From the NCBI RefSeq assembly GCF_001194135.2, contig NC_068988.1, forward strand, positions 73,559,122 through 73,595,701: a stretch of 36,580 bases of DNA, written 5' to 3'. The translations under genes were made by a program, and so were the position numbers. The notes under the pieces were generated by a model. That model was not told where the DNA came from. It was given only the letters and a program-made list of their open reading frames with translations, and did not search any database. Shown piece after piece: positions 4,614 through 25,430 of this stretch (within the stretch, counting starts at the first letter, position 1; every line of letters begins with the position of its first letter). Source of the DNA: Octopus bimaculoides (taxonomy: Eukaryota).

Positions 4614-5172
4614 TTTATCTAACTATGCTCTTAAAGAAACGTATTATGATGAAATCTGGCAGATCTCTAATATCGAAGATATACAAAAAATTCGATTGTT
4701 AAAGTGAAATTATTAAATAGATGAATCTTAATTATAGTACAGTTTTTTTCTCATCATTTATTAAATAAAGTAAAATAAACTTTGTATTTTGCTAAAAACT
4801 TCATTTACACAAATTCATTAAAAAAAATTCTCTCGTATTAAATATAACAGTGTTGTAGAAACATAACATTGTTGCATCGATGAACTTTAATTACAAATGA
4901 AAACGACAACATAGAATCACACATGACTGTGACTGATTTTCCAGCAATATTCTTAGAGGTTTGGCCATAATTTCTGAAATGGGGAGCCAAAATAACCTAA
5001 ATCTCACTAAATTAACAACTACTAAGGAGTGTTGACACTGATATGAGAGTGTATGTGAATACACACTAACAGAAACACACGCATACACACACGCATTCCC
5101 ATACCCACGTATACGCTCATATTCGGACGCGCGCAAGCACGCACACATACACACATATCAATATTATAAACA

Positions 5173-7108
5173 TCAGGTCACGTGATAATCTTTTCGGCTT
5201 GTGAGAACGACTTCTGTCAAAAAATCAATTAACCAGTATAGCGAGAAAAACAATGGGGCATATAAAAATCTATCGAAATAAATAAGTGAGCGCTTCAAAG
5301 TTGGCAACAAATTTTGCTCTTTGATTAATTTCCTTATACGTTTCTGAAAACCCGTATGTAGACCAGCCATCACCGAAGCATTATCATATGCTTGCCCTCT
5401 ACAATTTTGAATACCAATTCTGTCTTACCCTAAATTTTCCAAAATCATTGTCGAAATATTCTCGGCGGTTTTAACTGTTTTCATTGAAATCAACAATTGA
5501 TTCCACAACCTCATCTTTATTTTCACCGATCATAACATAGCGTAAAATTGGATTTGTTTGATTCTTATAAGGAGGGATAGCAAATATCATGGAAAAGTAC
5601 TTAGCTTCTTTTACTTGTTTGATTACTTTGCCTCTTACGTTCTTTCCTAAGATTCCTATAAACTCATTCTGAATAGTAGAAAACAGAAAGGAAATAGCAA
5701 ATTTGTTTCCCAACTGAACTGTTCACGGTGCACTGGATCAAAATGTTGTCAGCAAATGAACTGGCTCTAAAAAATTTCCTCTCTTTTCCATTGCTTCAGT
5801 TTCAACATCAGTCTCAGTTCCCTTATAGTTCACTCCTTCTCGGTGTCCGCGTAAAACTAAATTCTGTTAAGCTAGAAATCTGATAAAATCAAAGTAGGTT
5901 GAAAGGAATTCTTTCCACTTTTTCACTTGGCATTCAACAGCTTCTTATTTTTTATTGCTTTTGCTGGTTTTTAACTAATTGTTGCCTCCACGAGCAATCC
6001 CAGTTCCAACTCCTTTTATTGTGTAAAATTCCGAATGTGAATTGCACTGGGTTCATTTTCAGACATTCTCGGATTCAGTTTCCACCAGAGTTTGAATCCA
6101 GGCTCAGAATTAAATCTTGTGTTACTTCTGTCTGAAAGCAATTTGCAATAAAAGCAGTAAAGAGCTTCATTGGAAGGTGAGTACGACATCTATGATTGCA
6201 AAATCCTTTCACCATTATGAAGAGTCTGAAAAATTTGTTACGCATTAGTCTTTTAGTATGACTCTTTGGTTGTGTAGTGGCGCGTGTGGCCGACATTGGC
6301 CGCCATCTTGGGAAGTGCCATTGCGCATGTGCAAGGGACTTGCCGTCAGCGGAAGTACCCGAGCATGCATGCGCAATGCAACAGGTGGAGAGAAAGCAAT
6401 AGCGTTCGATCTCTTCTCTATCTAGCAGCTGTCGCGACAACACGTTCTTCCAGTGCTCTCTCAACTCGATACCGACATGTGGTCGAAGCTTCCTTAGTAT
6501 TCTAGCGGCATGCCTGTTCACCCAGGAACGAAACGGCTCTACACCAACCTAGAATAAATTATTGATCTGTTGTTACCGTTATCCCTCGTGTTGTTGTATT
6601 TCTGGATTTCAATGATTAATATAAGAACTGGGGAGAGATGGCCGAGCCGTCATATCTCATCCAATTCTTATAGTTGAAACACCTTGGTGAATAACTTCAC
6701 CAAAATCATAATCTGGATTTTGAACCATAGATACACCTTGAAGTACCAGAAAATTCCGTGTGTCATTGCTAATCTTAAATAATTTGTCTAATGCATTAAG
6801 TAAACGCAAAAGATCTGCCACCCATTATATAAGCTAAATATCACTGAATCTCTATGTTAAAATTTTTTATAGGTAGCGAAAATGTTTCTTTTATCAATTT
6901 ATATGACAATGGTTGACTGACTACATACCCGAATATATACCATAGTTAAAGTTACTCTAAATCAAAAACTGAGTAGTGTCCCGATATTAAAAAGCATTTA
7001 AATTTCAGTACAGCCTATATAGGCTTATACAGCAGACCAAGAAGTGTTGCCTCCAAAAAAGCATCGCCCGGGCAGGCCACCCTTCCTCATCCCTTAGCTA
7101 CGCTACAA
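5173..7108 (-). mobile_element. hAT transposon remnant (DUF4371/ZMYM1-like, Tip100-like group): 5' end plus N-terminal and central transposase
   Basis: Minus-strand fragments: ISNDTRNFLVLQG..QNPDYDF (~6700-6790), LHNGERILQS*MSYSPSNEALYCFYCKLL (~6130-6220), TIQNEFIGILG...KEAKYFSMIF..ILRYV (5471-5713) and CRGQAYDNASVMAG (~5365-5410). The terminus-like sequence at 7091-7108 reads TGTAGCGTAGCTAAGGG on the minus strand, similar to CAGTRGCGTAGC hAT TIRs. The other end was not found. Confidence 0.8.
6266..6551. promoter_or_regulatory. CpG-rich cluster of housekeeping-promoter-like motifs
   Basis: YY1-type GCCGCCATCTTG at 6299-6310, ETS-type GGAAGT at 6311-6316 and CGGAAGT at 6350-6356, NRF1-type TGCGCATGTGCA at 6322-6333 and TGCATGCGCA at 6366-6375, and the palindrome TGTCGCGACA at 6430-6439. 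About 20 CpGs lie in an otherwise AT-rich context. Function is not demonstrated. Confidence 0.5.
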
Positions 7109-7776: not shown

Positions 7777-8664
7777 NNNNNNNNNNNNNNNNNNNNNNNN
7801 NNNNNNNNNNNNNNNNNNNNNNNNNNNNNNNNNNNNNNNNNNNNNNNNNNNNNNNNNNNNNNNNNNNNNNNNNNNNNNNNNNNNNNNNNNNNNNNNNNNN
7901 NNNNNNNNNNNNNNNNNNNNNNNNNNNNNNNNNNNNNNNNNNNNNNNNNNNNNNNNNNNNNNNNNNNNNNNNNNNNNNNNNNNNNNNNNNNNNNNNNNNN
8001 NNNNNNNNNNNNNNNNNNNNNNNNNNNNNNNNNNNNNNNNNNNNNNNNNNNNNNNNNNNNNNNNNNNNNNNNNNNNNNNNNNNNNNNNNNNNNNNNNNNN
8101 NNNNNNNNNNNNNNNNNNNNNNNNNNNNNNNNNNNNNNNNNNNNNNNNNNNNNNNNNNNNNNNNNNNNNNNNNNNNNNNNNNNNNNNNNNNNNNNNNNNN
8201 NNNNNNNNNNNNNNNNNNNNNNNNNNNNNNNNNNNNNNNNNNNNNNNNNNNNNNNNNNNNNNNNNNNNNNNNNNNNNNNNNNNNNNNNNNNNNNNNNNNN
8301 NNNNNNNNNNNNNNNNNNNNNNNNNNNNNNNNNNNNNNNNNNNNNNNNNNNNNNNNNNNNNNNNNNNNNNNNNNNNNNNNNNNNNNNNNNNNNNNNNNNN
8401 NNNNNNNNNNNNNNNNNNNNNNNNNNNNNNNNNNNNNNNNNNNNNNNNNNNNNNNNNNNNNNNNNNNNNNNNNNNNNNNNNNNNNNNNNNNNNNNNNNNN
8501 NNNNNNNNNNNNNNNNNNNNNNNNNNNNNNNNNNNNNNNNNNNNNNNNNNNNNNNNNNNNNNNNNNNNNNNNNNNNNNNNNNNNNNNNNNNNNNNNNNNN
8601 NNNNNNNNNNNNNNNNNNNNNNNNNNNNNNNNNNNNNNNNNNNNNNNNNNNNNNNNNNNNNNNN
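7777..8664. other. Assembly gap (N run)
   Basis: N characters, with microsatellites on both sides. Confidence 1.
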
Positions 8665-8696
<32 letters not shown>

Positions 8697-10431
8697 TACA
8701 TGTATATGTATATACATACATACTTACACACACACACACACACACACACACGTGTATAGCCAGACAAAAGGCATGATAAAAATTGTGTGTGTGTGTGTGT
8801 GTGTACATATATTGAAAGGTTATTCTACATGCAATGTATAATCTATGATGATGCATTTTACGTATTTCTTTATGTTTTTTTATCATTTCGTGTTCTGATC
8901 CACTGTATATCAGGTAGGAAATTGCACATTAAATTGACAATTTTATTAAATTTATGTTGGTACATACATACATACATACATACATACATACATACATTCA
9001 TATGTACGTACATTCAAATGTACGTACATTCATATGTACGTACACCTCCGTGCATGCATATGTGTATCTGAAGCGTATAAATCATAGACACAATATAATA
9101 CATTAATGTAGTTCTTCGCACCTTTGTCAACAAGCAACAAATATTATTTCATTTCCAAATATTTCTTAAATGTGTTTAATGTTTAAATAGTATCAAATAT
9201 ATCTAGAACTACGACATTCGATAAAAATAAGGTGCGAGACAAACAAAATAGCATTTTTCCCCTCGTACGTTATTCATGTATCATTTCATCTCGATATGGT
9301 GTAGCTATCTCTCTCGGCGTAAGTCCCTTCCACTCATCTCCTTCCTTTGTTGGTAGTAGCGTCTACCGCTTCTCCCCACACCCCAGCAGCTTTTCTTTTC
9401 CATTTCTAAATGCAGGCGTATACGCACTTGCGCAAGCGCGCCGCACGCTCGCGCGCACACGCACACGCACGCACTCACACGCACACACACGCACACACAC
9501 ACACACACACTAATACGTTTTGCATACATGCATCCACTGTCTTACAAACATTCGTACAATTCTTAATAAGTAGAGAGAGCTTCATTCAATGTGCACATAC
9601 CTTATATTGCAGTGATGTAATTATATATCACAGAGCATTTAGTTCGGCTGTCATCCTTTTTCTCCAGGTATCTACGCTCCAAGAATTAAGTACTAGAAGA
9701 AATGACAAAATGATATTTATAAAATGTACTATCAAAAAAATTGAAGAATCGTGTCTAACAACTATTATCGTTTCTAAAAGCTGAAGAAGGAAACAGGGAA
9801 TGTTTCTTTATACGTATATGTTCAGTATCTGATTATTGGTTGCATACATCATATTCAAATAACTTTCTGCTTGCTTGCTAAATAAATAAATAAATAAATA
9901 AATACTAAAAAGGTTTGAAAAGTAAACAAAAAAAACAAACATCTTATTTATTTGCTGAGAAATCATTGAAAAAACACGGTCATTTTATTGTCAGTGATTT
10001 CTTAAGACTAAAACGGACGCCGAAAGAACCACTCGAAAATTAAAAATAGCACCTATGTTTTGTGACAATGACGTATGTTATATTTTGATAGGTTTCCCGA
10101 GCATTCTAACGTAGTTTTTTTTTTCTCTATCTTTAGCATATTTAGTGCGGACACGGCGAAGAGATATGAGAGTTTCGACAAGATACCCTTTTTATAGTGA
10201 CATTAGTGATAGTAACCGAATACACAAACAACAGAACGCTCGAGAACTCAACCCTTCTGTATATCACAACCGAAGTTATTTGTTTCATTTATTAGACTGA
10301 GCCGGGAAATGGTACATATCTTGGTACAGATATAATGCAATTCCATTTGTAAAATAAGAATCATCAGCAAATTGTATGGTTCTTGCTTAATGTTTATTCT
10401 TATTTCGAAAAAGAAATGTGTTTGCCATTTT

Positions 10432-13292: not shown

Positions 13293-13452
13293 TACATACA
13301 TACATACATACATACATACATACATACATGCATGCATGCATGCATGCGTGCGTGCATGCGTGCGTGCATGCGTGCGTGCATGCGTGCGTGCGTACGTACA
13401 TACATACANNNNNNNNNNACATACATACATACATACATACATACATACATAC
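13293..13452. repeat. Compound (ATAC)n/(ATGC)n/(GTGC)n microsatellite with a 10-N gap at 13409-13418
   Basis: Directly visible. Confidence 0.95.
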
Positions 13453-14840
13453 GGGCTGCTTGATGAAATCCGAGCCATTGATGTGAAAGCCCGAAAAATA
13501 CTAACAAGCACACATAATCTCCGCATAAACAGTGACGGAAACCGCCTCTACTTAAAACGAAAACAAGGCAGCAGAAGCTCAACTTCAATCCAAAATGCCT
13601 TTGAATGTCGCACCATATGCCGTCGGCAACATCTTCTAAACACCAACTGTCGAAATGCGTCCCTTAACCAAGTTTGCATACATGAGGCTGATAACATCAT
13701 AAGACGTGGAAGGCAGCTCGTTGAGCAACACTCTTTGTCTGATAACCTAGAATACATGCCCAAGGAAGTCGCACGACTACCGCAACCTATCACGAGATGA
13801 AAGGATGAAATTATATGAGCAAAAGACTATGCCTGGATATGTCAGTAGAAAGCTCCGTGATGGTAGTAACATCGATCATCAAAGCAGTTTATCGTAGACC
13901 AATAGCCGGATTACTAACTCCTACTTTGAAGGTTATGCGTTTGCAATCTAGGAACAGGAAATATCAACCAAGTACCTGATGCGCAAAAGGGATAGAGTTG
14001 AAGGAAAAGCCGTAAAATGTGACAACAGATGCAGACTTTGTGGAGTTAATACCGAAGATATCACCCACATCATAAGCAGTTGTGCGAAAATATAATCACG
14101 GTGTTATCTACCGATGAGACATGATGTTGTAGCTAGGACACTCTATAATGAAATCTGTCGGAAGGCTAATCCCGAAGACAAAGAAATAAGAGCACATAAT
14201 AGCCACTCATAATAAAAGGAATACTAGTGGAATGTACCAGTGAAGCCCCCAATAAAATGTTAGCACAACAGACCTGATATAATCATAAGGGATTAAGAAC
14301 AGAAACTGTGCACAGTTGTGGAAATTAGTTGCCCAGTGGATGTTAACATAAAGCTGAAGATCAGTGAAAAAGAGAAAACCTATGTTGAACTATTCAGAAA
14401 TCTATAGTTACTCTATCCAGATTACAAGTTCATGCTTATACCTGTTATTATTGGGGCCCTGGGATATGTAACAGACTGCCTAAATACCAATCTTGAGAAA
14501 CTAGGCTTCTTAAAACCAGAAAGGAAAAAGCTAATTTGAAGACTACAGATCTTATCCATCACTAGAACTGTAAAAATCTGTAAAACTTTCCAGAAGTTTA
14601 TCATTTAAATATATATCAGCATGTCTAGATATGCAATTATATACATGAGAATACATACATAAAACATACAAATCTGCACATACATGCATACATACTTACA
14701 TACAAAAATACCCTGTTGTTGATGTTGAAATTCCAATGAAGGAACCTTGCGTCTAGGTTAGAAACCGGTTCTTTCTCTATTGGCAAGAAATCTTGATACA
14801 AACTGAATAATGACATACATATGGAGCCTTTTATTCATAC
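13453..14840 (+). mobile_element. 5'-truncated R4/Dong-like LINE with CCHC motif, RLE domain and complete 3' end, embedded in (ATAC)n
   Basis: Fragments: DEIRAIDVKARKILT..RLYLKRKQG, FEGYAFAI*EQEISTKYL, CRLCGVNTEDITHIISSC, HNRPDIII..VVEISCPVDVNI..EKEKTY, and IPVIIGALGYV, with a stop at 14606-14608. The 3'UTR ends ...GAGCCTTTTATTCA followed by (TACA)n. Confidence 0.92.
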
Positions 14841-15823: not shown

Positions 15824-18279
15824 CAGGATTATACACCGGTGAAATGTGCCCTTATTGAAATTTTCCGAGAAGAAATAATTTTGGCTTTGAAGTACTCTCT
15901 TGAGGAGAGAGTATTCTCTACCAAAGTAAGTAAAAAAAACAAAAAACATCAGTTAACGGTATTAAAAGCTGTTAACAAAATTGGTGACGAGTATTTACAG
16001 CAGTGTGATGAACCCACATTCTGACAGATTAACGCCTGCCTATACGTTCTGGCTACTCTTGCAAAGCAGTACATGAATGACATTCAAAAAGTAAAGAAAA
16101 CTGAAACAACAAAGAAGGTACCAACATAGGTTTTGAAGACAGAGAAAAAGATAACTGGTTTACGGAAGACCATCAGTCGTGTGAAGATTCTTATTGCGTG
16201 CAAACAAGCAAATTACTATACGTCCCACCAACAGAAAGTAAAAAAGGAGTTAAAAATGATGTTTGGAGACAGTAAAAAGAAGACACTCACTTGCAAAAGC
16301 TGTCAGTGAGAAACTCCGACATCAGAAAAGTATAACCGAGAGAAAAACAATAAACAAAAAATTTAACCGGAACCAGGCAGCTGTATACAAAGACATGAGA
16401 AGAGGAGCAGTGAACATCACAGAAACTCCTGTTATATATACAGCATTGATGGTGATACTCTTTCAACTGTAATCCAGTAACTTCAGGATGGAAAAGCACC
16501 CGGCAGAGACTTGATTGTTGGATATTGGTACAAGAAGCTAACCTTCTACCGACCATATCTTATCAATCTGTTCCAACAAACTCTCAATGAGAACAATAGC
16601 ATATCACACTGGTTAGCTCCGGCAGAGACAAAATTGACCCCAAAATGTAGAACCACCGACATGGCAAAAAACTACCGGCCAATTACATGCCAGAACTTAA
16701 TGTATAAGATAGATACAACATGCTTAAACCCTTCCTCCAGGACCATTGTGAAACCGATAACATCATCACAGCAGAACAATGCAGCTGGGAAGAAAGGAGT
16801 CTGGGGATGTGCCGATCAATTAATCAACAAAACTGTGATGTCAGAAGTGCGAGAGCATAGGAGGAACCTGGTTTCAATGTGGCTAGACTACAAGAAAGCC
16901 TTTGACTCTCTTCCCCAGTCATGGATGATAGAAGACCTTCAATTTGCTAAAGTTCCAATGAGCATAGTCAAGGCCATAGCTGACCTGACTTCATCGTGAG
17001 TCACCATCTTGAAATTAAACAAAAAGAGTGACTGTATTATTACTGATAGAATGCAGTATCGCAAAGCATATTCCAAGAGGACAGCCTCTCTGTGATGTTG
17101 CTTATACTTTCTGTAAAGCCCTTGTCATTCATGTTAAGGAAGTCTGGTTCAGAAGGAAACAGAAATACCAAAATTACACAGTTTCTTTGTGGATGACTTG
17201 AAACTTTATGCAAAGAATATGCACGAGAAGAAAAATAGTCTTGACCTATAAACAACATTCTCAAAGGATGTAGAGTTGGAGTTTGGTGAGGATAAATGTT
17301 ATTATATGGTTGTAAAAAGGGGGAAAACTGTAAACCAGACTAGCAACATCCCCCTCAATGACTTGACTGTTTCCTCTATATCTGACGAGGAATGTTACAG
17401 GTATCTAGGGGTGGATGAAAACATATGTTACAATGGCACCTGTAACAAAACATGTGTCACTAAAGAACATTACAGCCGAATAAAGAAAATTTGAACCTCA
17501 GAACTTTATATTGAATAAAACAGTGGCCACAATGTGTTTGCAGTGTCAGTAGTCATACCAACATTTGGGCTGCTTGACTGGACGCTTGATGAAATCCGAG
17601 CCATTGATATGAAAATCCGAAAAATACTAACAAGCACACATAATTTCCACATAAACAGTGACGGAGACCGCCTCTACCTAAAACGAAAACAAGGCAGCAG
17701 ACATCGATCCAAAATGCCTTTGAATATCGCATCATATCCTTTCGGCAACATCTTTTAACCACCAAGCGTCGAAGTGCATACATGAGGCTGATAACATCAT
17801 AAGACTTGGAAGGCAGCTCCTTGAGCAACATTCCTTACCTAACAACCCTAACCCTAACCTAGAATACATGCCCAAAGAAATCACACGACTCTACCGCAAC
17901 CTATCATCAGATGAAAGGAGGAGCATATATGAGTAAAAGACTATGCATGGATATGTCAGTAGAAAGCTCCGAGATGATAGTAACATTGATCATCAAAGCA
18001 GTCTATCATGGACCAATAACCAGATTACTACCTCCCACTTTGAAGGTTATACATTTACAATCCAGGAACAGGAAATATCAACCAAATACCTGATGCACAA
18101 AATGGATAGAGATGCAGAAAAAGCAGTAAAAGGTGACAACCGATGCAGACATTGTGGAGTTAACACTGAAGATATCATCCACATCATAAGGAGTTGTCCG
18201 GAAACGTAATCACGGTGTTATCTGCCGATGAGACATGGTGTTATAGCTAGGTTACTCTATAATGAAATCCGTCGGAAGG
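15205..18279 (+). mobile_element. Near full-length but disrupted R4/Dong-like LINE (N-terminal region, RT, CCHC), truncated before the RLE
   Basis: N-terminus DLFNCYKKAK..GYVNRSKSYWDDLHPE. RT motifs NYRPITCQNLMYK, GCADQL, WLDYKKAFDSLP, IFQEDSLS, FVDDLKLYAK, EFGEDKC, YRYLGVDE. Also CRHCGVNTEDIIHIIRSC. 17570-18279 is homologous to 13453-14170. There is an internal (AGT)n at 15779-15823. Confidence 0.92.
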
Positions 18280-20179: not shown

Positions 20180-20473
20180 NNNNNNNNNNNNNNNNNNNNN
20201 NNNNNNNNNNNNNNNNNNNNNNNNNNNNNNNNNNNNNNNNNNNNNNNNNNNNNNNNNNNNNNNNNNNNNNNNNNNNNNNNNNNNNNNNNNNNNNNNNNNN
20301 NNNNNNNNNNNNNNNNNNNNNNNNNNNNNNNNNNNNNNNNNNNNNNNNNNNNNNNNNNNNNNNNNNNNNNNNNNNNNNNNNNNNNNNNNNNNNNNNNNNN
20401 NNNNNNNNNNNNNNNNNNNNNNNNNNNNNNNNNNNNNNNNNNNNNNNNNNNNNNNNNNNNNNNNNNNNNNNNN
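20180..20473. other. Assembly gap (N run)
   Basis: N characters. Confidence 1.
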
Positions 20474-22904: not shown

Positions 22905-22914
22905 NNNNNNNNNN
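22905..22914. other. 10-N assembly gap
   Basis: N characters. Confidence 1.
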
Positions 22915-23126: not shown

Positions 23127-25430
23127 AAGGATCGGATTTAAACCAAAGGGGCCCCATGGCACTTCAAGTTCGGTGGCCCCTCACAAACAACACTTATAAC
23201 CTTGGAAAATCACCATATTTAAATCTCAAAACCCATAAAAAATGCCAGAAATTGAATTTGACGGTTTAGCAAAGGCAGTCTGAATGCATTAATTAATGCA
23301 AAATTTTGTGATCTAGACTAAATATAGCAAGTTTTACTAACTTACTGCTATATACTACTGCAATATCTACAAAAAGTCTTTCTTTCTGCATTTGGTATTT
23401 AAAAAGTCTTTAGCGAATTCTTCAGACTGTGTTGTCTTTAGAACACTGCTCTCTACATCCAAAATGCAGAGAGCACTTAGTCTTTCATGGGTCATCGTGG
23501 TCCTCAGGTAATTCTTTATCAGATCCAACTTACTAAACGACCTCTCTTCTGAACAATTCGTGACCATCCAGCACAAAAATATTTTTAAAGCTTCATCAAC
23601 ACTAGGAGAGGTTTCAGCAAGCCCTTCATTATGAATAAAAAGTGCCTGTTGAGATGGGGTGAAACATAACTTGAGTTTACAAAAACCTGCAAACTGTACA
23701 ATTTCTTCTATGATCACTAGGGAAAGCAGTGATGAGTTTCACAGCTTCAGATCTTATTTCTGCATCAGGTAAACTACATAAGCCCGCATTGACTTTAAAC
23801 TTCCCATACACTGATTGATAGGCTACCCTATATTTTTGTAAGGCAACAGACAACAGATCTAAAATGACATTGAATGTTCCGTGTCTGAACTTTTCTTTTG
23901 TAGAAAGGACAACTTCCTCTGAGGCTGATGCTGGGTTTACATCATGTTTATTTCCTTTCCTTGCTCTACCTTTTGTTGCTTTATACTCTGTGTTTCCACA
24001 CATGTTCCTGGCATCCAACTTCAATTCTTCATACCTATCTCGCAATGATTTCAGAAAACTTTCCAAAGAATCAATAAGATCCATCGCTTTAATCAAATCA
24101 ACTTCAACTCCTTGAAAAGCTTCATTTGGACTGTTAAACCGTACATGAATTATATTCCAAATCTTAACCATCAGAGCAGTTTCAAGGCAATCCATTTTGT
24201 CTGCCAATGTCTGAGCTTCTTATCTTGCTTCAGATGTTTGCTTTAGATCATCGTCAATATCTCTAAGCGCATTTTAAATGCAGCTATATCCATCAACGAG
24301 GGCTTCAGTAGCATCAGCTTCCTGACAAGTACTTCAAAGTTAGCACTCTTTTATTGCCTTCCAAAGATTTAATCAAATTTTCCCATCTGTGTGTTAATGC
24401 AAACAAAGAGGTGTGTAACATTTTTATGAAACCAAAATAGCTAACAGCTTCAACAAGCAGCAGCTTGTCCAACAAAATTCTACGAATGAGCAGCACAAGG
24501 AATGAAAACTGCAGCCAGATTCTTTTCCTTGAGTCTGGCTTGTATTCTTGTGCAGTGACAGAACATATCACTGGCGTTATCATAGGACTGTCCCCTGCAG
24601 TCTTCAAAATTTATACCCTTTTTTTTTAAAAAATTCTAAGAGAGATGTAGCCAGTACTTCCTCTTTGTGAGAGCCAGTTTGCAGGAAAGGTAACAACCTT
24701 TCTATTGGCTTATCAGAAATAGCATAACGCACAATAACCGTTAGTTGGTCAACATGAGCCTGGTCTAGTGCTGAGTCTACAGAAACAGTGAAGTACTTGG
24801 CAGTTTTAAGTTCTGTAACAATATAATTCTTGACATATTTGTCATTAATAGAACAATTTCTTCGTAGATGGTAGATTACTGCTTATCACTTCCAGGATTG
24901 CCAAATGTTTTCAAGTGACCCATTAGAAATGGATCAAATTGTGCCATAAGTTCCGTAATTCCTAGAAAATTCCCATTGTGTTTAGAGACTATTATCTCTT
25001 CACTATTTCTGAATGCCAGACCTCTCACGGCCTGAAATATTGTCACAACCACAACACGGTGTAATACTTCAGTCCAGTATTTCTTGTTTTTCCAACTTGT
25101 TAACATGAGAATATTCCTTTCATAAAAGATTGAACTTCAACACAGAATCTCTGTGGCCTTGACTTTGTTCATGTGTTTTCATTTTCTCCTCTGCTTTTTT
25201 TTTTTTTTTTCTCAATCGTTAAAGCCTTCCTTGTTGGAAAACCTGTCAGGTTGGCTTGACATTAAAGTACAGTAAAAGCAATAAACTGCACCCTTTGATG
25301 AACTGTACAGAAATCACTTTTTTTATAAGATGCTTACCATAGTCATGAGTGGTGTAAAACATTGAATTTTAAAAATAATGATAGCGTCCAAACAGTTTGC
25401 CTTTCCCTGGTTGATAATGGTGTCGTGGTT
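23127..25430 (-). mobile_element. hAT transposon (DUF4371/ZMYM1-like) with disrupted transposase
   Basis: Minus-strand fragments: YSSSKGAVYCFYC, RGLAFR..HNGNFLG..ELMAQFDPFL, AKYFTVSVDSALDQAHVDQLTVIVRY, CRGQSYDNAS, FIPCAAHS, and the hATC dimerisation domain VTNCSEERSFSKLDLIKNYLRTTMTHERLSALCIL (23367-23717). The terminus at 23127-23140 (AAGGATCGGATTTA) resembles CAGGGCCGGATTTA. The upstream end was not found. Confidence 0.9.

What the first reader, a model, noticed from the sequence alone, without database searches (positions are those of the whole stretch)
6262..6670. Ready-made housekeeping-promoter cassette inserted inside a hAT transposase gene
Seen: on the minus strand the transposase reads ..QNPDYDFGEVIHQGVST (~6680) and resumes at KRLMRNKFF/QTLHNGERIL (~6255), with about 410 bp of non-transposase DNA between. 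About 285 bp of that DNA is CpG-rich and carries YY1 (GCCGCCATCTTG), two ETS (GGAAGT), two NRF1-like motifs and the perfect palindrome TGTCGCGACA, which is similar to the BANP/ZBTB33-type TCTCGCGAGA. It is bracketed by imperfect inverted repeats GGTTGTGTAG (6268-6277) and CTACACCAACC (6539-6549), with TA just beyond the right one. Established: YY1, NRF1, ETS/GABP and BANP-type motifs are the typical set at vertebrate CpG housekeeping promoters. Inference: this may be a small mobile element (MITE) that captured or mimics a host promoter and spreads it. That the flanking transposase segments were originally contiguous is based on my recollection of this hAT family.
Basis: partly seen in the sequence, partly recalled or inferred. 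Interest (0 to 1): 0.72.

Follow-up and report, generated by a model that had tools for sequence, protein, structure and literature searches.

The report
Promoter-like 0.4-kb insertion in dead transposon
A 400-base, CpG-rich piece of DNA that looks like a housekeeping-gene promoter followed by a poly(A) signal really was inserted into a decayed hAT transposase gene, but it lacks the ends of a MITE and is more likely a lone retrotransposon LTR or a one-off copy of a host promoter.

Summary
A related hAT copy from a public assembly (L001, about 84% identical) has the uninterrupted site, so window 6273-6672 is a true insertion. It is flanked by an exact 4-bp target duplication (GTTG), possibly extending to 11 bp, and no target bases are lost. 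All four motif classes (YY1, ETS, NRF1-like, CGCG palindrome) occur within 277 bp. None of 5000 dinucleotide shuffles reproduces this. The insert has CpG o/e 1.0, while the hAT flanks have decayed to 0.59.

The MITE reading is not supported. Half of the proposed left repeat arm (GGTTG) is hAT flank. The repeat pair is at chance level (47% of shuffles match or beat it). There is no TA on the left side. About 120 bp of the insert was left unexplained, and that part holds the best AATAAA plus GT-rich poly(A) site in the window.

Promoter, then poly(A) signal, a TG start and a 4-bp duplication fit a solo LTR best (about 0.4). The 3' end reads TA, not CA. A captured host promoter fragment (0.25) and an unclassified retroposed repeat (0.15) remain open.

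No second copy was found anywhere. The source genome could not be searched, so mobility is untested. The finding is ordinary to mildly interesting.

The parts
6673..6776 (-). Upstream part of a decayed ZMYM1-like (DUF4371) hAT transposase pseudogene, reading ..FLVLQGVSMVQNPDYDFGEVIHQGVST.
   Evidence: It aligns to L001 598-701 at 85% identity. The protein is colinear with its homologues.
5304..6272 (-). Downstream part of the same hAT pseudogene (KSHTKRLMRNKFF.. TTF-type zinc finger, DUF4371 region), with several frameshifts and stop codons. It is truncated near 5290.
   Evidence: It aligns to L001 698-1669 at 84% identity. The stitched translation hits DUF4371 proteins at up to 1.5e-88.
6269..6272 (+). 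Left copy of the duplicated target, GTTG. The duplication may extend back to 6262 (CTCTTTGGTTG).
   Evidence: L001 has a single CAAC (hAT sense) where the window has one on each side of the insert.
6673..6676 (+). Right copy of the duplicated target, GTTG. The duplication may start at 6666 (TCTTATAGTTG, 8 of 11 bases matching the L001 site).
   Evidence: No target bases are lost relative to L001.
6273..6672 (+). The inserted DNA: 400 bp if the duplication is 4 bp, or 393 bp (6273-6665) if it is 11 bp. It begins TGTAGTGGCGCG and ends CCAATTCTTATA.
   Evidence: It is absent from L001 and from all protein homologues. No Rfam family or tRNA matches it. The window holds no second copy.
6273..6543 (.). 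CpG-island-like core with 54% GC and CpG o/e 1.00. This is the putative promoter, or U3 if the insert is an LTR.
   Evidence: It is the only CpG-dense block in the window that is not a microsatellite.
6295..6316 (-). Composite box read on the minus strand: ACTTCC (ETS), then CAAGATGGCGGC (YY1, containing an ATG at 6306-6304), then CCAAT.
6319..6378 (.). NRF1-like dyad. The perfect 11-nt inverted repeat CATTGCGCATG / CATGCGCAATG encloses CGGAAGT (ETS, 6350-6356).
6430..6439 (.). The perfect palindrome TGTCGCGACA. It shares the TCGCGA core and 8 of 10 bases with TCTCGCGAGA.
   Evidence: it is present in 0.08% of shuffles and is the only TCGCGA in the window.
6553..6605 (+). Poly(A)-signal-like unit on the plus strand: AATAAA (6553-6558), followed by the GT-rich stretches TGTTGTT (6568-6574) and GTGTTGTTGTATTTCTGG (6588-6605).
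   Evidence: It has the strongest downstream GT-rich element of all 94 AATAAA hexamers in the window.

Best explanation
The segment is a nested, transposition-type insertion of about 400 bp (6273-6672) into an old, dead ZMYM1-like hAT copy. Its anatomy is best read on the plus strand as a solo LTR of an uncharacterised LTR retrotransposon.

On that reading, the U3 region is a CpG-rich pol II promoter carrying the CCAAT/YY1/ETS/NRF1-like cluster at 6295-6378 and a CGCG palindrome at 6430. An R region ends at a canonical AATAAA plus GT-rich poly(A) site (6553-6605). A short U5 follows. The element starts with TG and is flanked by a 4-bp target duplication, GTTG.

The 'ready-made promoter' would then be the element's own promoter. 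LTR elements copy their promoter with them because reverse transcription regenerates U3, and recombination between two LTRs leaves a solo LTR behind.

What is shown: the insertion, its boundaries to within 7 bp, the duplication, the motif enrichment, the poly(A)-like site and the CpG retention. What is inferred: LTR identity, the direction of transcription and any activity.
For: - The empty site in L001 and the colinear homologues establish an insertion with a precise target duplication and no loss of target bases. That is the signature of integrase, transposase or target-primed integration rather than break repair.
- The duplicated GTTG is exact, and 4-6 bp is the LTR/integrase range (established knowledge).
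- The insert begins with TG (TGTAG).
- The promoter-motif cluster is highly non-random.
- It is followed on the same strand, 150-250 nt downstream, by the best AATAAA plus GT-rich site of 94 in the window.
- The size of 400 bp is typical of an LTR.
- No coding potential or relatives were found, and no structured-RNA family matched.
- The region is a graveyard of nested transposable elements.
Against: - The 3' end reads ..TTATA, not ..CA. It is one C-to-T transition away from ..TTACA, but the rule is not met as it stands.
- No second copy, paired LTR, primer-binding site or polypurine tract was seen.
- The duplication could be 11 bp (8 of 11 bases matching), which would point to target-primed reverse transcription instead.
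- The YY1 box is oriented for minus-strand transcription. In human promoters YY1 sits just downstream of the TSS and NRF1 upstream of it (PMC11269187), which fits a minus-strand promoter at least as well.
- A CpG o/e of 1.0 beside decayed flanks implies a young or protected insert. A young LTR would be expected to keep its terminal CA.
Confidence: 0.4

Rival explanations
1. The insert is a one-off copy of a host gene's promoter and 5' end. Read on the minus strand it would be about 350 bp of upstream DNA, a TSS near 6315-6325, the YY1/ATG box and 11 codons. It would have been captured into the hAT remnant at the DNA level, by repair of a staggered break or by template switching. It would not be a mobile family.
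For: - The minus-strand motif order is CGCG palindrome, NRF1-like, ETS, NRF1-like, ETS, YY1 with ATG. This matches the positional preferences reported for human promoters (PMC11269187).
- An early AATAAA on the antisense strand is what divergent promoters typically show (established knowledge).
- The insert has no TIRs, no canonical LTR end, no poly(A) tail and no pol III boxes.
- No second copy was found anywhere searched.
Against: - A clean target duplication with no deleted bases is unusual for captured filler DNA.
- A randomly captured fragment would have to happen to be a promoter, and promoters make up only a small fraction of a genome.
- Most 0.4-kb insertions inside old transposable elements are themselves transposable elements.
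- The ATG opens only a 17-codon frame.
Confidence: 0.25
2. The insert is a member of an unclassified non-LTR-type repeat, either SINE-like or an internally deleted LINE that keeps its 5'UTR promoter and 3' tail. It would have been inserted by target-primed reverse transcription with an 11-bp duplication, giving an insert of 6273-6665.
For: - The right flank continues to match the L001 target for 11 nt (8 of 11), then homology stops abruptly.
- In plus orientation all the transcription-factor sites lie within the first 170 nt, as in the internal promoters of LINE 5'UTRs.
- There are no TIRs.
Against: - The extra 7 nt match at only 4 of 7, which has a chance probability of about 0.13, so the 11-bp length is not established.
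- There is no poly(A) or simple-repeat tail.
- ARAGORN found no tRNA-like head and Rfam found no 7SL, 5S or other family.
- The insert has no similarity to the tail of the LINE-like element in the window.
- The AATAAA at +281 would truncate such an RNA before its observed end.
Confidence: 0.15
3. This is the reader's model: a 283-bp MITE (6268-6549) bounded by the inverted repeats GGTTGTGTAG and CTACACCAACC with a TA target site.
For: The repeat pair and the right-hand TA exist. The segment is small and non-coding.
Against: - GGTTG (6268-6272) is hAT flank, present in the empty site of L001.
- The repeat pair is at chance level, with 47% of shuffles scoring at least as well.
- There is no TA on the left side.
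- The model leaves 6550-6672 unexplained, although that stretch is also absent from L001.
Confidence: 0.03
4. The segment is not an insertion at all, but an intron, normal hAT sequence or an assembly chimera.
For: The window has assembly gaps elsewhere.
Against: - L001 and eleven homologues lack the segment and read straight through the site.
- The junctions ACT|ATAAGA and ..CCA|AAG are not GT-AG splice sites.
- A target duplication is present.
- No gap lies within 1 kb of the segment.
Confidence: 0.03

Closest known systems
Solo LTRs of Ty3/Gypsy-type retrotransposons (for example the arthropod mdg1/412 group, which I recall from memory as having TGTAG..ACA ends and 4-bp duplications)
   Same: It is a few hundred bp long, starts with TG(TAG) and has a 4-bp target duplication. 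It has a promoter followed by a poly(A) signal on one strand, and it sits nested inside another transposable element.
   Different: The 3' end is TA, not CA. No paired copy, primer-binding site, polypurine tract or internal gag/pol was seen. Family membership cannot be tested without the genome.
Promoter and first-exon capture by transposons (bat Helitrons carrying the NUBPL promoter; plant Pack-MULEs). This comparison rests on my own knowledge.
   Same: A host-type promoter fragment is found inside or next to mobile DNA.
   Different: Helitron ends are absent: no 5'-TC, no CTRR-3' with a hairpin and no A|T target, and there is a duplication instead. MULE-type TIRs are also absent. Here the hAT is the recipient of the DNA, not the carrier.
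Vertebrate CpG-island housekeeping promoters (the NRF1, ETS/GABP, YY1 and BANP/ZBTB33 motif set)
   Same: The insert has the same motif vocabulary, CpG o/e of about 1, GC above 50% and a length above 200 bp. YY1 lies downstream of the NRF1 and ETS sites on the minus strand.
   Different: The organism is unknown and probably not a vertebrate. The NRF1 sites are imperfect (TGCGCATGTGCA and a half-site). The palindrome is TGTCGCGACA rather than TCTCGCGAGA. There is no evidence of a TSS, open chromatin or a downstream gene.
Internal promoter of the LINE-1 5'UTR, with its YY1 box and CpG island
   Same: A mobile element carries its own CpG-rich pol II promoter with a YY1 site near one end.
   Different: The YY1 box is antisense relative to the promoter-first orientation. 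There is no LINE body, tail or poly(A).

Membership tests
   The empty site places the ends at 6273 and 6665-6672. The ends TGTAGTGG.. and ..CCAATTCTTATA are not inverted repeats. The proposed left arm includes 5 nt of hAT flank. The proposed pair is matched or beaten by 47% of shuffles.
   The duplicated target is GTTG, possibly up to 11 bp. There is no TA on the left. As an 8-bp duplication it would match at only 6 of 8.
   The source genome is not searchable. There were 0 further copies in the 36-kb window, 0 in translated protein collections and 0 homologous loci in JGI metagenome contigs.
Solo LTR | 5'-TG ... CA-3' termini with a short inverted repeat | tested here: not met
   The 5' TG (TGTAG) is present. 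The 3' end is ..TTATA, which is TA rather than CA and one transition away from ..TTACA.
Solo LTR | A 4-6-bp target-site duplication | tested here: met
   GTTG at 6269-6272 and 6673-6676 is exact, and it occurs only once in L001. A longer duplication is not excluded.
Solo LTR | U3 promoter, then an R region with a poly(A) signal, then U5, all on one strand | tested here: met
   This is met at the level of sequence motifs only. The promoter motifs lie at 6295-6439. The AATAAA with the best GT-rich downstream element of 94 sites lies at 6553-6605. No transcript data are available.
Solo LTR | Related full-length elements with two LTRs, a primer-binding site, a polypurine tract and gag/pol | not testable with these tools
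   This needs the source genome.
SINE | A pol III head derived from tRNA, 7SL or 5S | tested here: not met
   ARAGORN found none. Rfam found none at gathering threshold or at E<=10, apart from one chance miRNA hit at E=9.3.
SINE | A poly(A), simple-repeat or LINE-derived 3' tail | tested here: not met
   Neither end has such a tail. The insert has no similarity to the LINE-like tail in the window.
Helitron | 5'-TC, CTRR-3' with a subterminal hairpin, insertion between A and T, and no duplication | tested here: not met
   The ends are TGTAG../..TTATA. The target CAAC is duplicated and the site contains no AT.
CpG-island-type promoter | At least 200 bp, GC at least 50% and CpG o/e at least 0.6, with housekeeping transcription-factor motifs | tested here: met
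   The core is 271 bp with 54% GC and o/e 1.00. All four motif classes are present, against 0 of 5000 shuffles.
CpG-island-type promoter | Transcription initiation, open chromatin and hypomethylation | not testable with these tools
   There is only an indirect hint. The flanks lost 16 of 30 CpGs to TG/CA while the insert keeps o/e 1.0. That could equally mean the insert is young.
hAT superfamily, ZMYM1-like / DUF4371 (the host element) | A TTF-type zinc finger plus DUF4371 and an RNase-H-like transposase core | tested here: met
   The stitched translation gives E=1.5e-88 to proteins carrying PF14291 and PF27073. The window's copy itself is too decayed for a direct Pfam hit.

The most novel reading that the evidence does not exclude
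The insert is one copy of a mobile family whose cargo is a complete host-type housekeeping promoter (CCAAT/YY1/ETS/NRF1-like sites plus a CGCG palindrome). This family would stay unmethylated after insertion and would seed new CpG-island-like promoters across the genome of a non-vertebrate animal. The preserved CpG content next to strongly decayed flanks would be the footprint of that protection.
Probability: 0.1. Interest if true: 0.65.

Novelty: new member of a known kind. Interest (0 to 1): 0.3.

Why it matters
If the piece belongs to a repeat family, it would be a clean example of a transposable element distributing a housekeeping-type, CpG-island-like promoter with its own terminator. It could be tested directly with copy-number, CAGE and methylation data. 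If it is a single captured promoter, it documents a rare route by which promoter DNA is duplicated into new contexts. As it stands, it is one nested insertion in a transposon graveyard, with no evidence of activity or spread.

Tried and rejected
- **Intron.** The junctions are not GT-AG, and the homologues and L001 read straight through the site.
- **Structured RNA or a SINE head.** Rfam (gathering threshold and E<=10) and ARAGORN were negative.
- **Coding exon.** There was no Pfam hit. A six-frame search of 5.8 billion proteins gave no relatives, although its candidate list may have been saturated by long proteins. A full HMMER scan with the longest frame gave only two repetitive, unrelated hits.
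- **Other copies.** A blastn search within the window found nothing longer than 19 nt. An exact 22-mer was absent from JGI metagenome and IMG/VR contigs. The NRF1-dyad pattern found 12 loci, but none is homologous beyond 16 nt. Host-like contigs L001, L002, L003 and L016 hold no copy.
- **Organism identification.** A second hAT copy gave no near-identical protein; the best named hit was 63% identical, from a firefly.
- **LINE partner.** The tail of the LINE-like repeat (ending at 14165 and 18279) is not similar to either end of the insert.
- **The 12-nt inverted repeat at 6620-6631 / 6661-6672 as a hairpin end.** It is comparable to background repeats in the AT-rich flanks, and part of it may be target sequence.
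- **Other CpG-dense blocks (5031-5150 and 9171-9500).** These are CACG-type microsatellites, not islands.

Full report
**Context.** The window is AT-rich (36% GC, CpG o/e 0.72) and full of microsatellites, assembly gaps and transposon debris. It looks like a metazoan genome, probably an invertebrate. Two protein searches gave no near-identical named proteins, so the organism was not identified.

On the minus strand, 6776 down to about 5290 is a frameshifted, stop-ridden fragment of a ZMYM1-like hAT transposase. A stitched translation hits DUF4371/PF27073 proteins at E values down to 1.5e-88, with 43-64% identity.

**Checking the observation.** In an alignment with eleven homologues, the window's ..QGVST (ending at 6672) and KSHTKRLMRNKFF (starting at 6266) line up without a gap against ..PGVSTKGSARKLTRDWFF.

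The decisive result came from fetching the contig that encodes the closest homologue (L001, an ENA assembly). Its hAT copy is about 84% identical in DNA to the window's copy, and it is continuous where the window is interrupted. Window 6776-6673 matches L001 598-701, and window 6272-5304 matches L001 698-1669.

In hAT sense, L001 reads ..GGTGTGTCAACCAAAGGACAAACT.. The window reads ..GGTGTTTCAAC|TATAAGAATTGG.. at the upstream junction and ..CGCCACTACA|CAACCAAAGAGTCATACT.. at the downstream junction. So CAAC (GTTG on the plus strand, 6269-6272 and 6673-6676) is duplicated, and no target base is missing.

The right flank goes on matching the L001 target for seven more bases at 4 of 7. This is compatible with an 11-bp duplication but is not significant by my own estimate (chance about 0.13). 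The insertion is therefore 6273-6672 (400 bp) or 6273-6665 (393 bp). It is not an intron, because the junctions are not GT-AG. It is not normal hAT sequence either.

**Is the motif cluster more than chance?** Yes. In 6273-6549 all four motif classes are present (YY1 core, GGAAGT, TGCGCATG and TCGCGA), and none of 5000 dinucleotide-preserving shuffles reproduces this. The rest of the window has no CGGAAGT, no TCGCGA and no extended YY1 box.

The two NRF1-like sites are the arms of a perfect 11-nt inverted repeat. An ATTGG/CCAAT box overlaps the YY1 box. The core 6273-6543 has 54% GC and CpG o/e 1.00. The other CpG-dense blocks in the window are CACG-type microsatellites.

The hAT flanks show methylation-type decay. 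Of 30 CpGs in L001 that align to the window's flanks, 10 are kept and 16 have become TG or CA. The flanks have o/e 0.59, against 0.87 in L001. The insert shows no such decay, so it is either younger than most of that decay or has been protected from it.

**The MITE model fails.** The left arm of the proposed inverted repeat (6268-6277) contains GGTTG, which is hAT sequence present in the empty site. The pair (10 matches with one gap) is the best long-range inverted repeat in the segment, yet 47% of shuffles do as well or better. TA occurs only on the right. The model also ignores 6550-6672, which is equally absent from L001. The true ends, TGTAGTGG.. and ..CCAATTCTTATA, are not inverted repeats.

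The hallmarks of other classes are also missing. For Helitrons there is no TC/CTRR, no A|T target and no absence of duplication. For SINEs there is no tRNA/7SL/5S head and no A-rich or LINE-like tail.

The AT-rich 120 bp on the right carries AATAAA (6553-6558) followed by TGTTGTT and GTGTTGTTGTATTTCTGG. Among the 94 AATAAA hexamers in the window, this one has the strongest downstream GT-rich element. On the plus strand the insert is therefore a promoter-like block followed 150-250 nt later by a textbook poly(A) signal. I found this after looking at the sequence, so it is suggestive rather than a formal test.

**Interpretation.** A clean target duplication with no loss of target bases points to enzyme-mediated integration rather than break repair. 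An element that carries an untranscribed promoter along with it, followed by a poly(A) signal, that starts with TG and makes a 4-bp duplication is what a solo LTR looks like. I take this as the best single explanation, at about 0.4.

Its weaknesses are real. The 3' end is TA, not CA, although it is one transition away. No partner LTR or second copy was seen. The high CpG content suggests a young copy, which sits awkwardly with a mutated terminus.

The main rival (0.25) is a one-off copy of a host promoter. On the minus strand the order is CGCG palindrome, NRF1-like, ETS, NRF1-like, ETS, then YY1 with an ATG. This matches the reported human preferences, with NRF1 upstream of the TSS and YY1 just downstream (PMC11269187). 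An early antisense poly(A) site is typical of divergent promoters (my own knowledge). Against this rival stand the clean duplication and the low prior that a captured fragment happens to be a promoter.

A target-primed, non-LTR repeat with an 11-bp duplication is a third option (0.15).

**What could not be done.** Substitutes were all negative:
- a search within the window;
- a six-frame protein search (of limited sensitivity);
- a full HMMER scan of one frame;
- two exact-pattern scans of JGI metagenome contigs and one of viral contigs;
- four host-like contigs.

These argue weakly against a very high-copy family in any sampled organism. They say nothing about the source genome.

**Verdict.** The 'promoter cassette' description is fair. 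The MITE mechanism is rejected. The most likely identity is an ordinary kind of object: a solo LTR or another nested element carrying its own promoter, or else a captured promoter fragment. Interest is modest unless genome-wide data show a family that spreads unmethylated, housekeeping-type promoters.

Noticed in passing
window 23370-25290 (minus strand): A second, different ZMYM1-like hAT copy with much longer open frames (176 aa and 116 aa) and a recognisable hAT dimerisation domain. Its best named relative is a firefly protein at 63% identity over 46% of the query.
   Followed up: partly
window 13458-14165 and 17584-18279; RT ORF at 16511-16999 (plus strand): Two copies (84-92% identical) of the 3' part of a LINE-like element, about 4.1 kb apart. 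Both end at ..AATGAAATC[CT]GTCGGAAGG. An RVT_1 fragment lies between them.
   Followed up: partly
window 5031-5150 and 9400-9510: CpG-dense blocks that are CACG/ACGC-type microsatellites, not CpG islands. They would confuse a simple CpG-island scan.
   Followed up: yes
window 6620-6631 / 6661-6672: A 12-nt inverted repeat (11 of 12 bases, 29-nt loop) lies right at the right-hand junction of the insert. It is probably chance, because part of it may be duplicated target sequence.
   Followed up: partly
L007 1573-1630, L009 663-720, L012 1631-1688 (JGI contigs, about 41% GC): Three eukaryote-like metagenome contigs share a long palindromic element built around CATTGCGCATGCATG..., flanked by CTGCAGTGGG. 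This looks like a repeat family carrying NRF1-type palindromes, unrelated in sequence to the window's insert.
   Followed up: no
window 6776-6800 and about 5290: The hAT copy is truncated at both ends. L001 positions 1-597 and everything beyond 1669 have no counterpart in the window. What replaced them was not examined.
   Followed up: no
window 7777-8664, 13409-13418, 20180-20473, 22905-22914: Assembly gaps (runs of N), each flanked by microsatellites.
   Followed up: no
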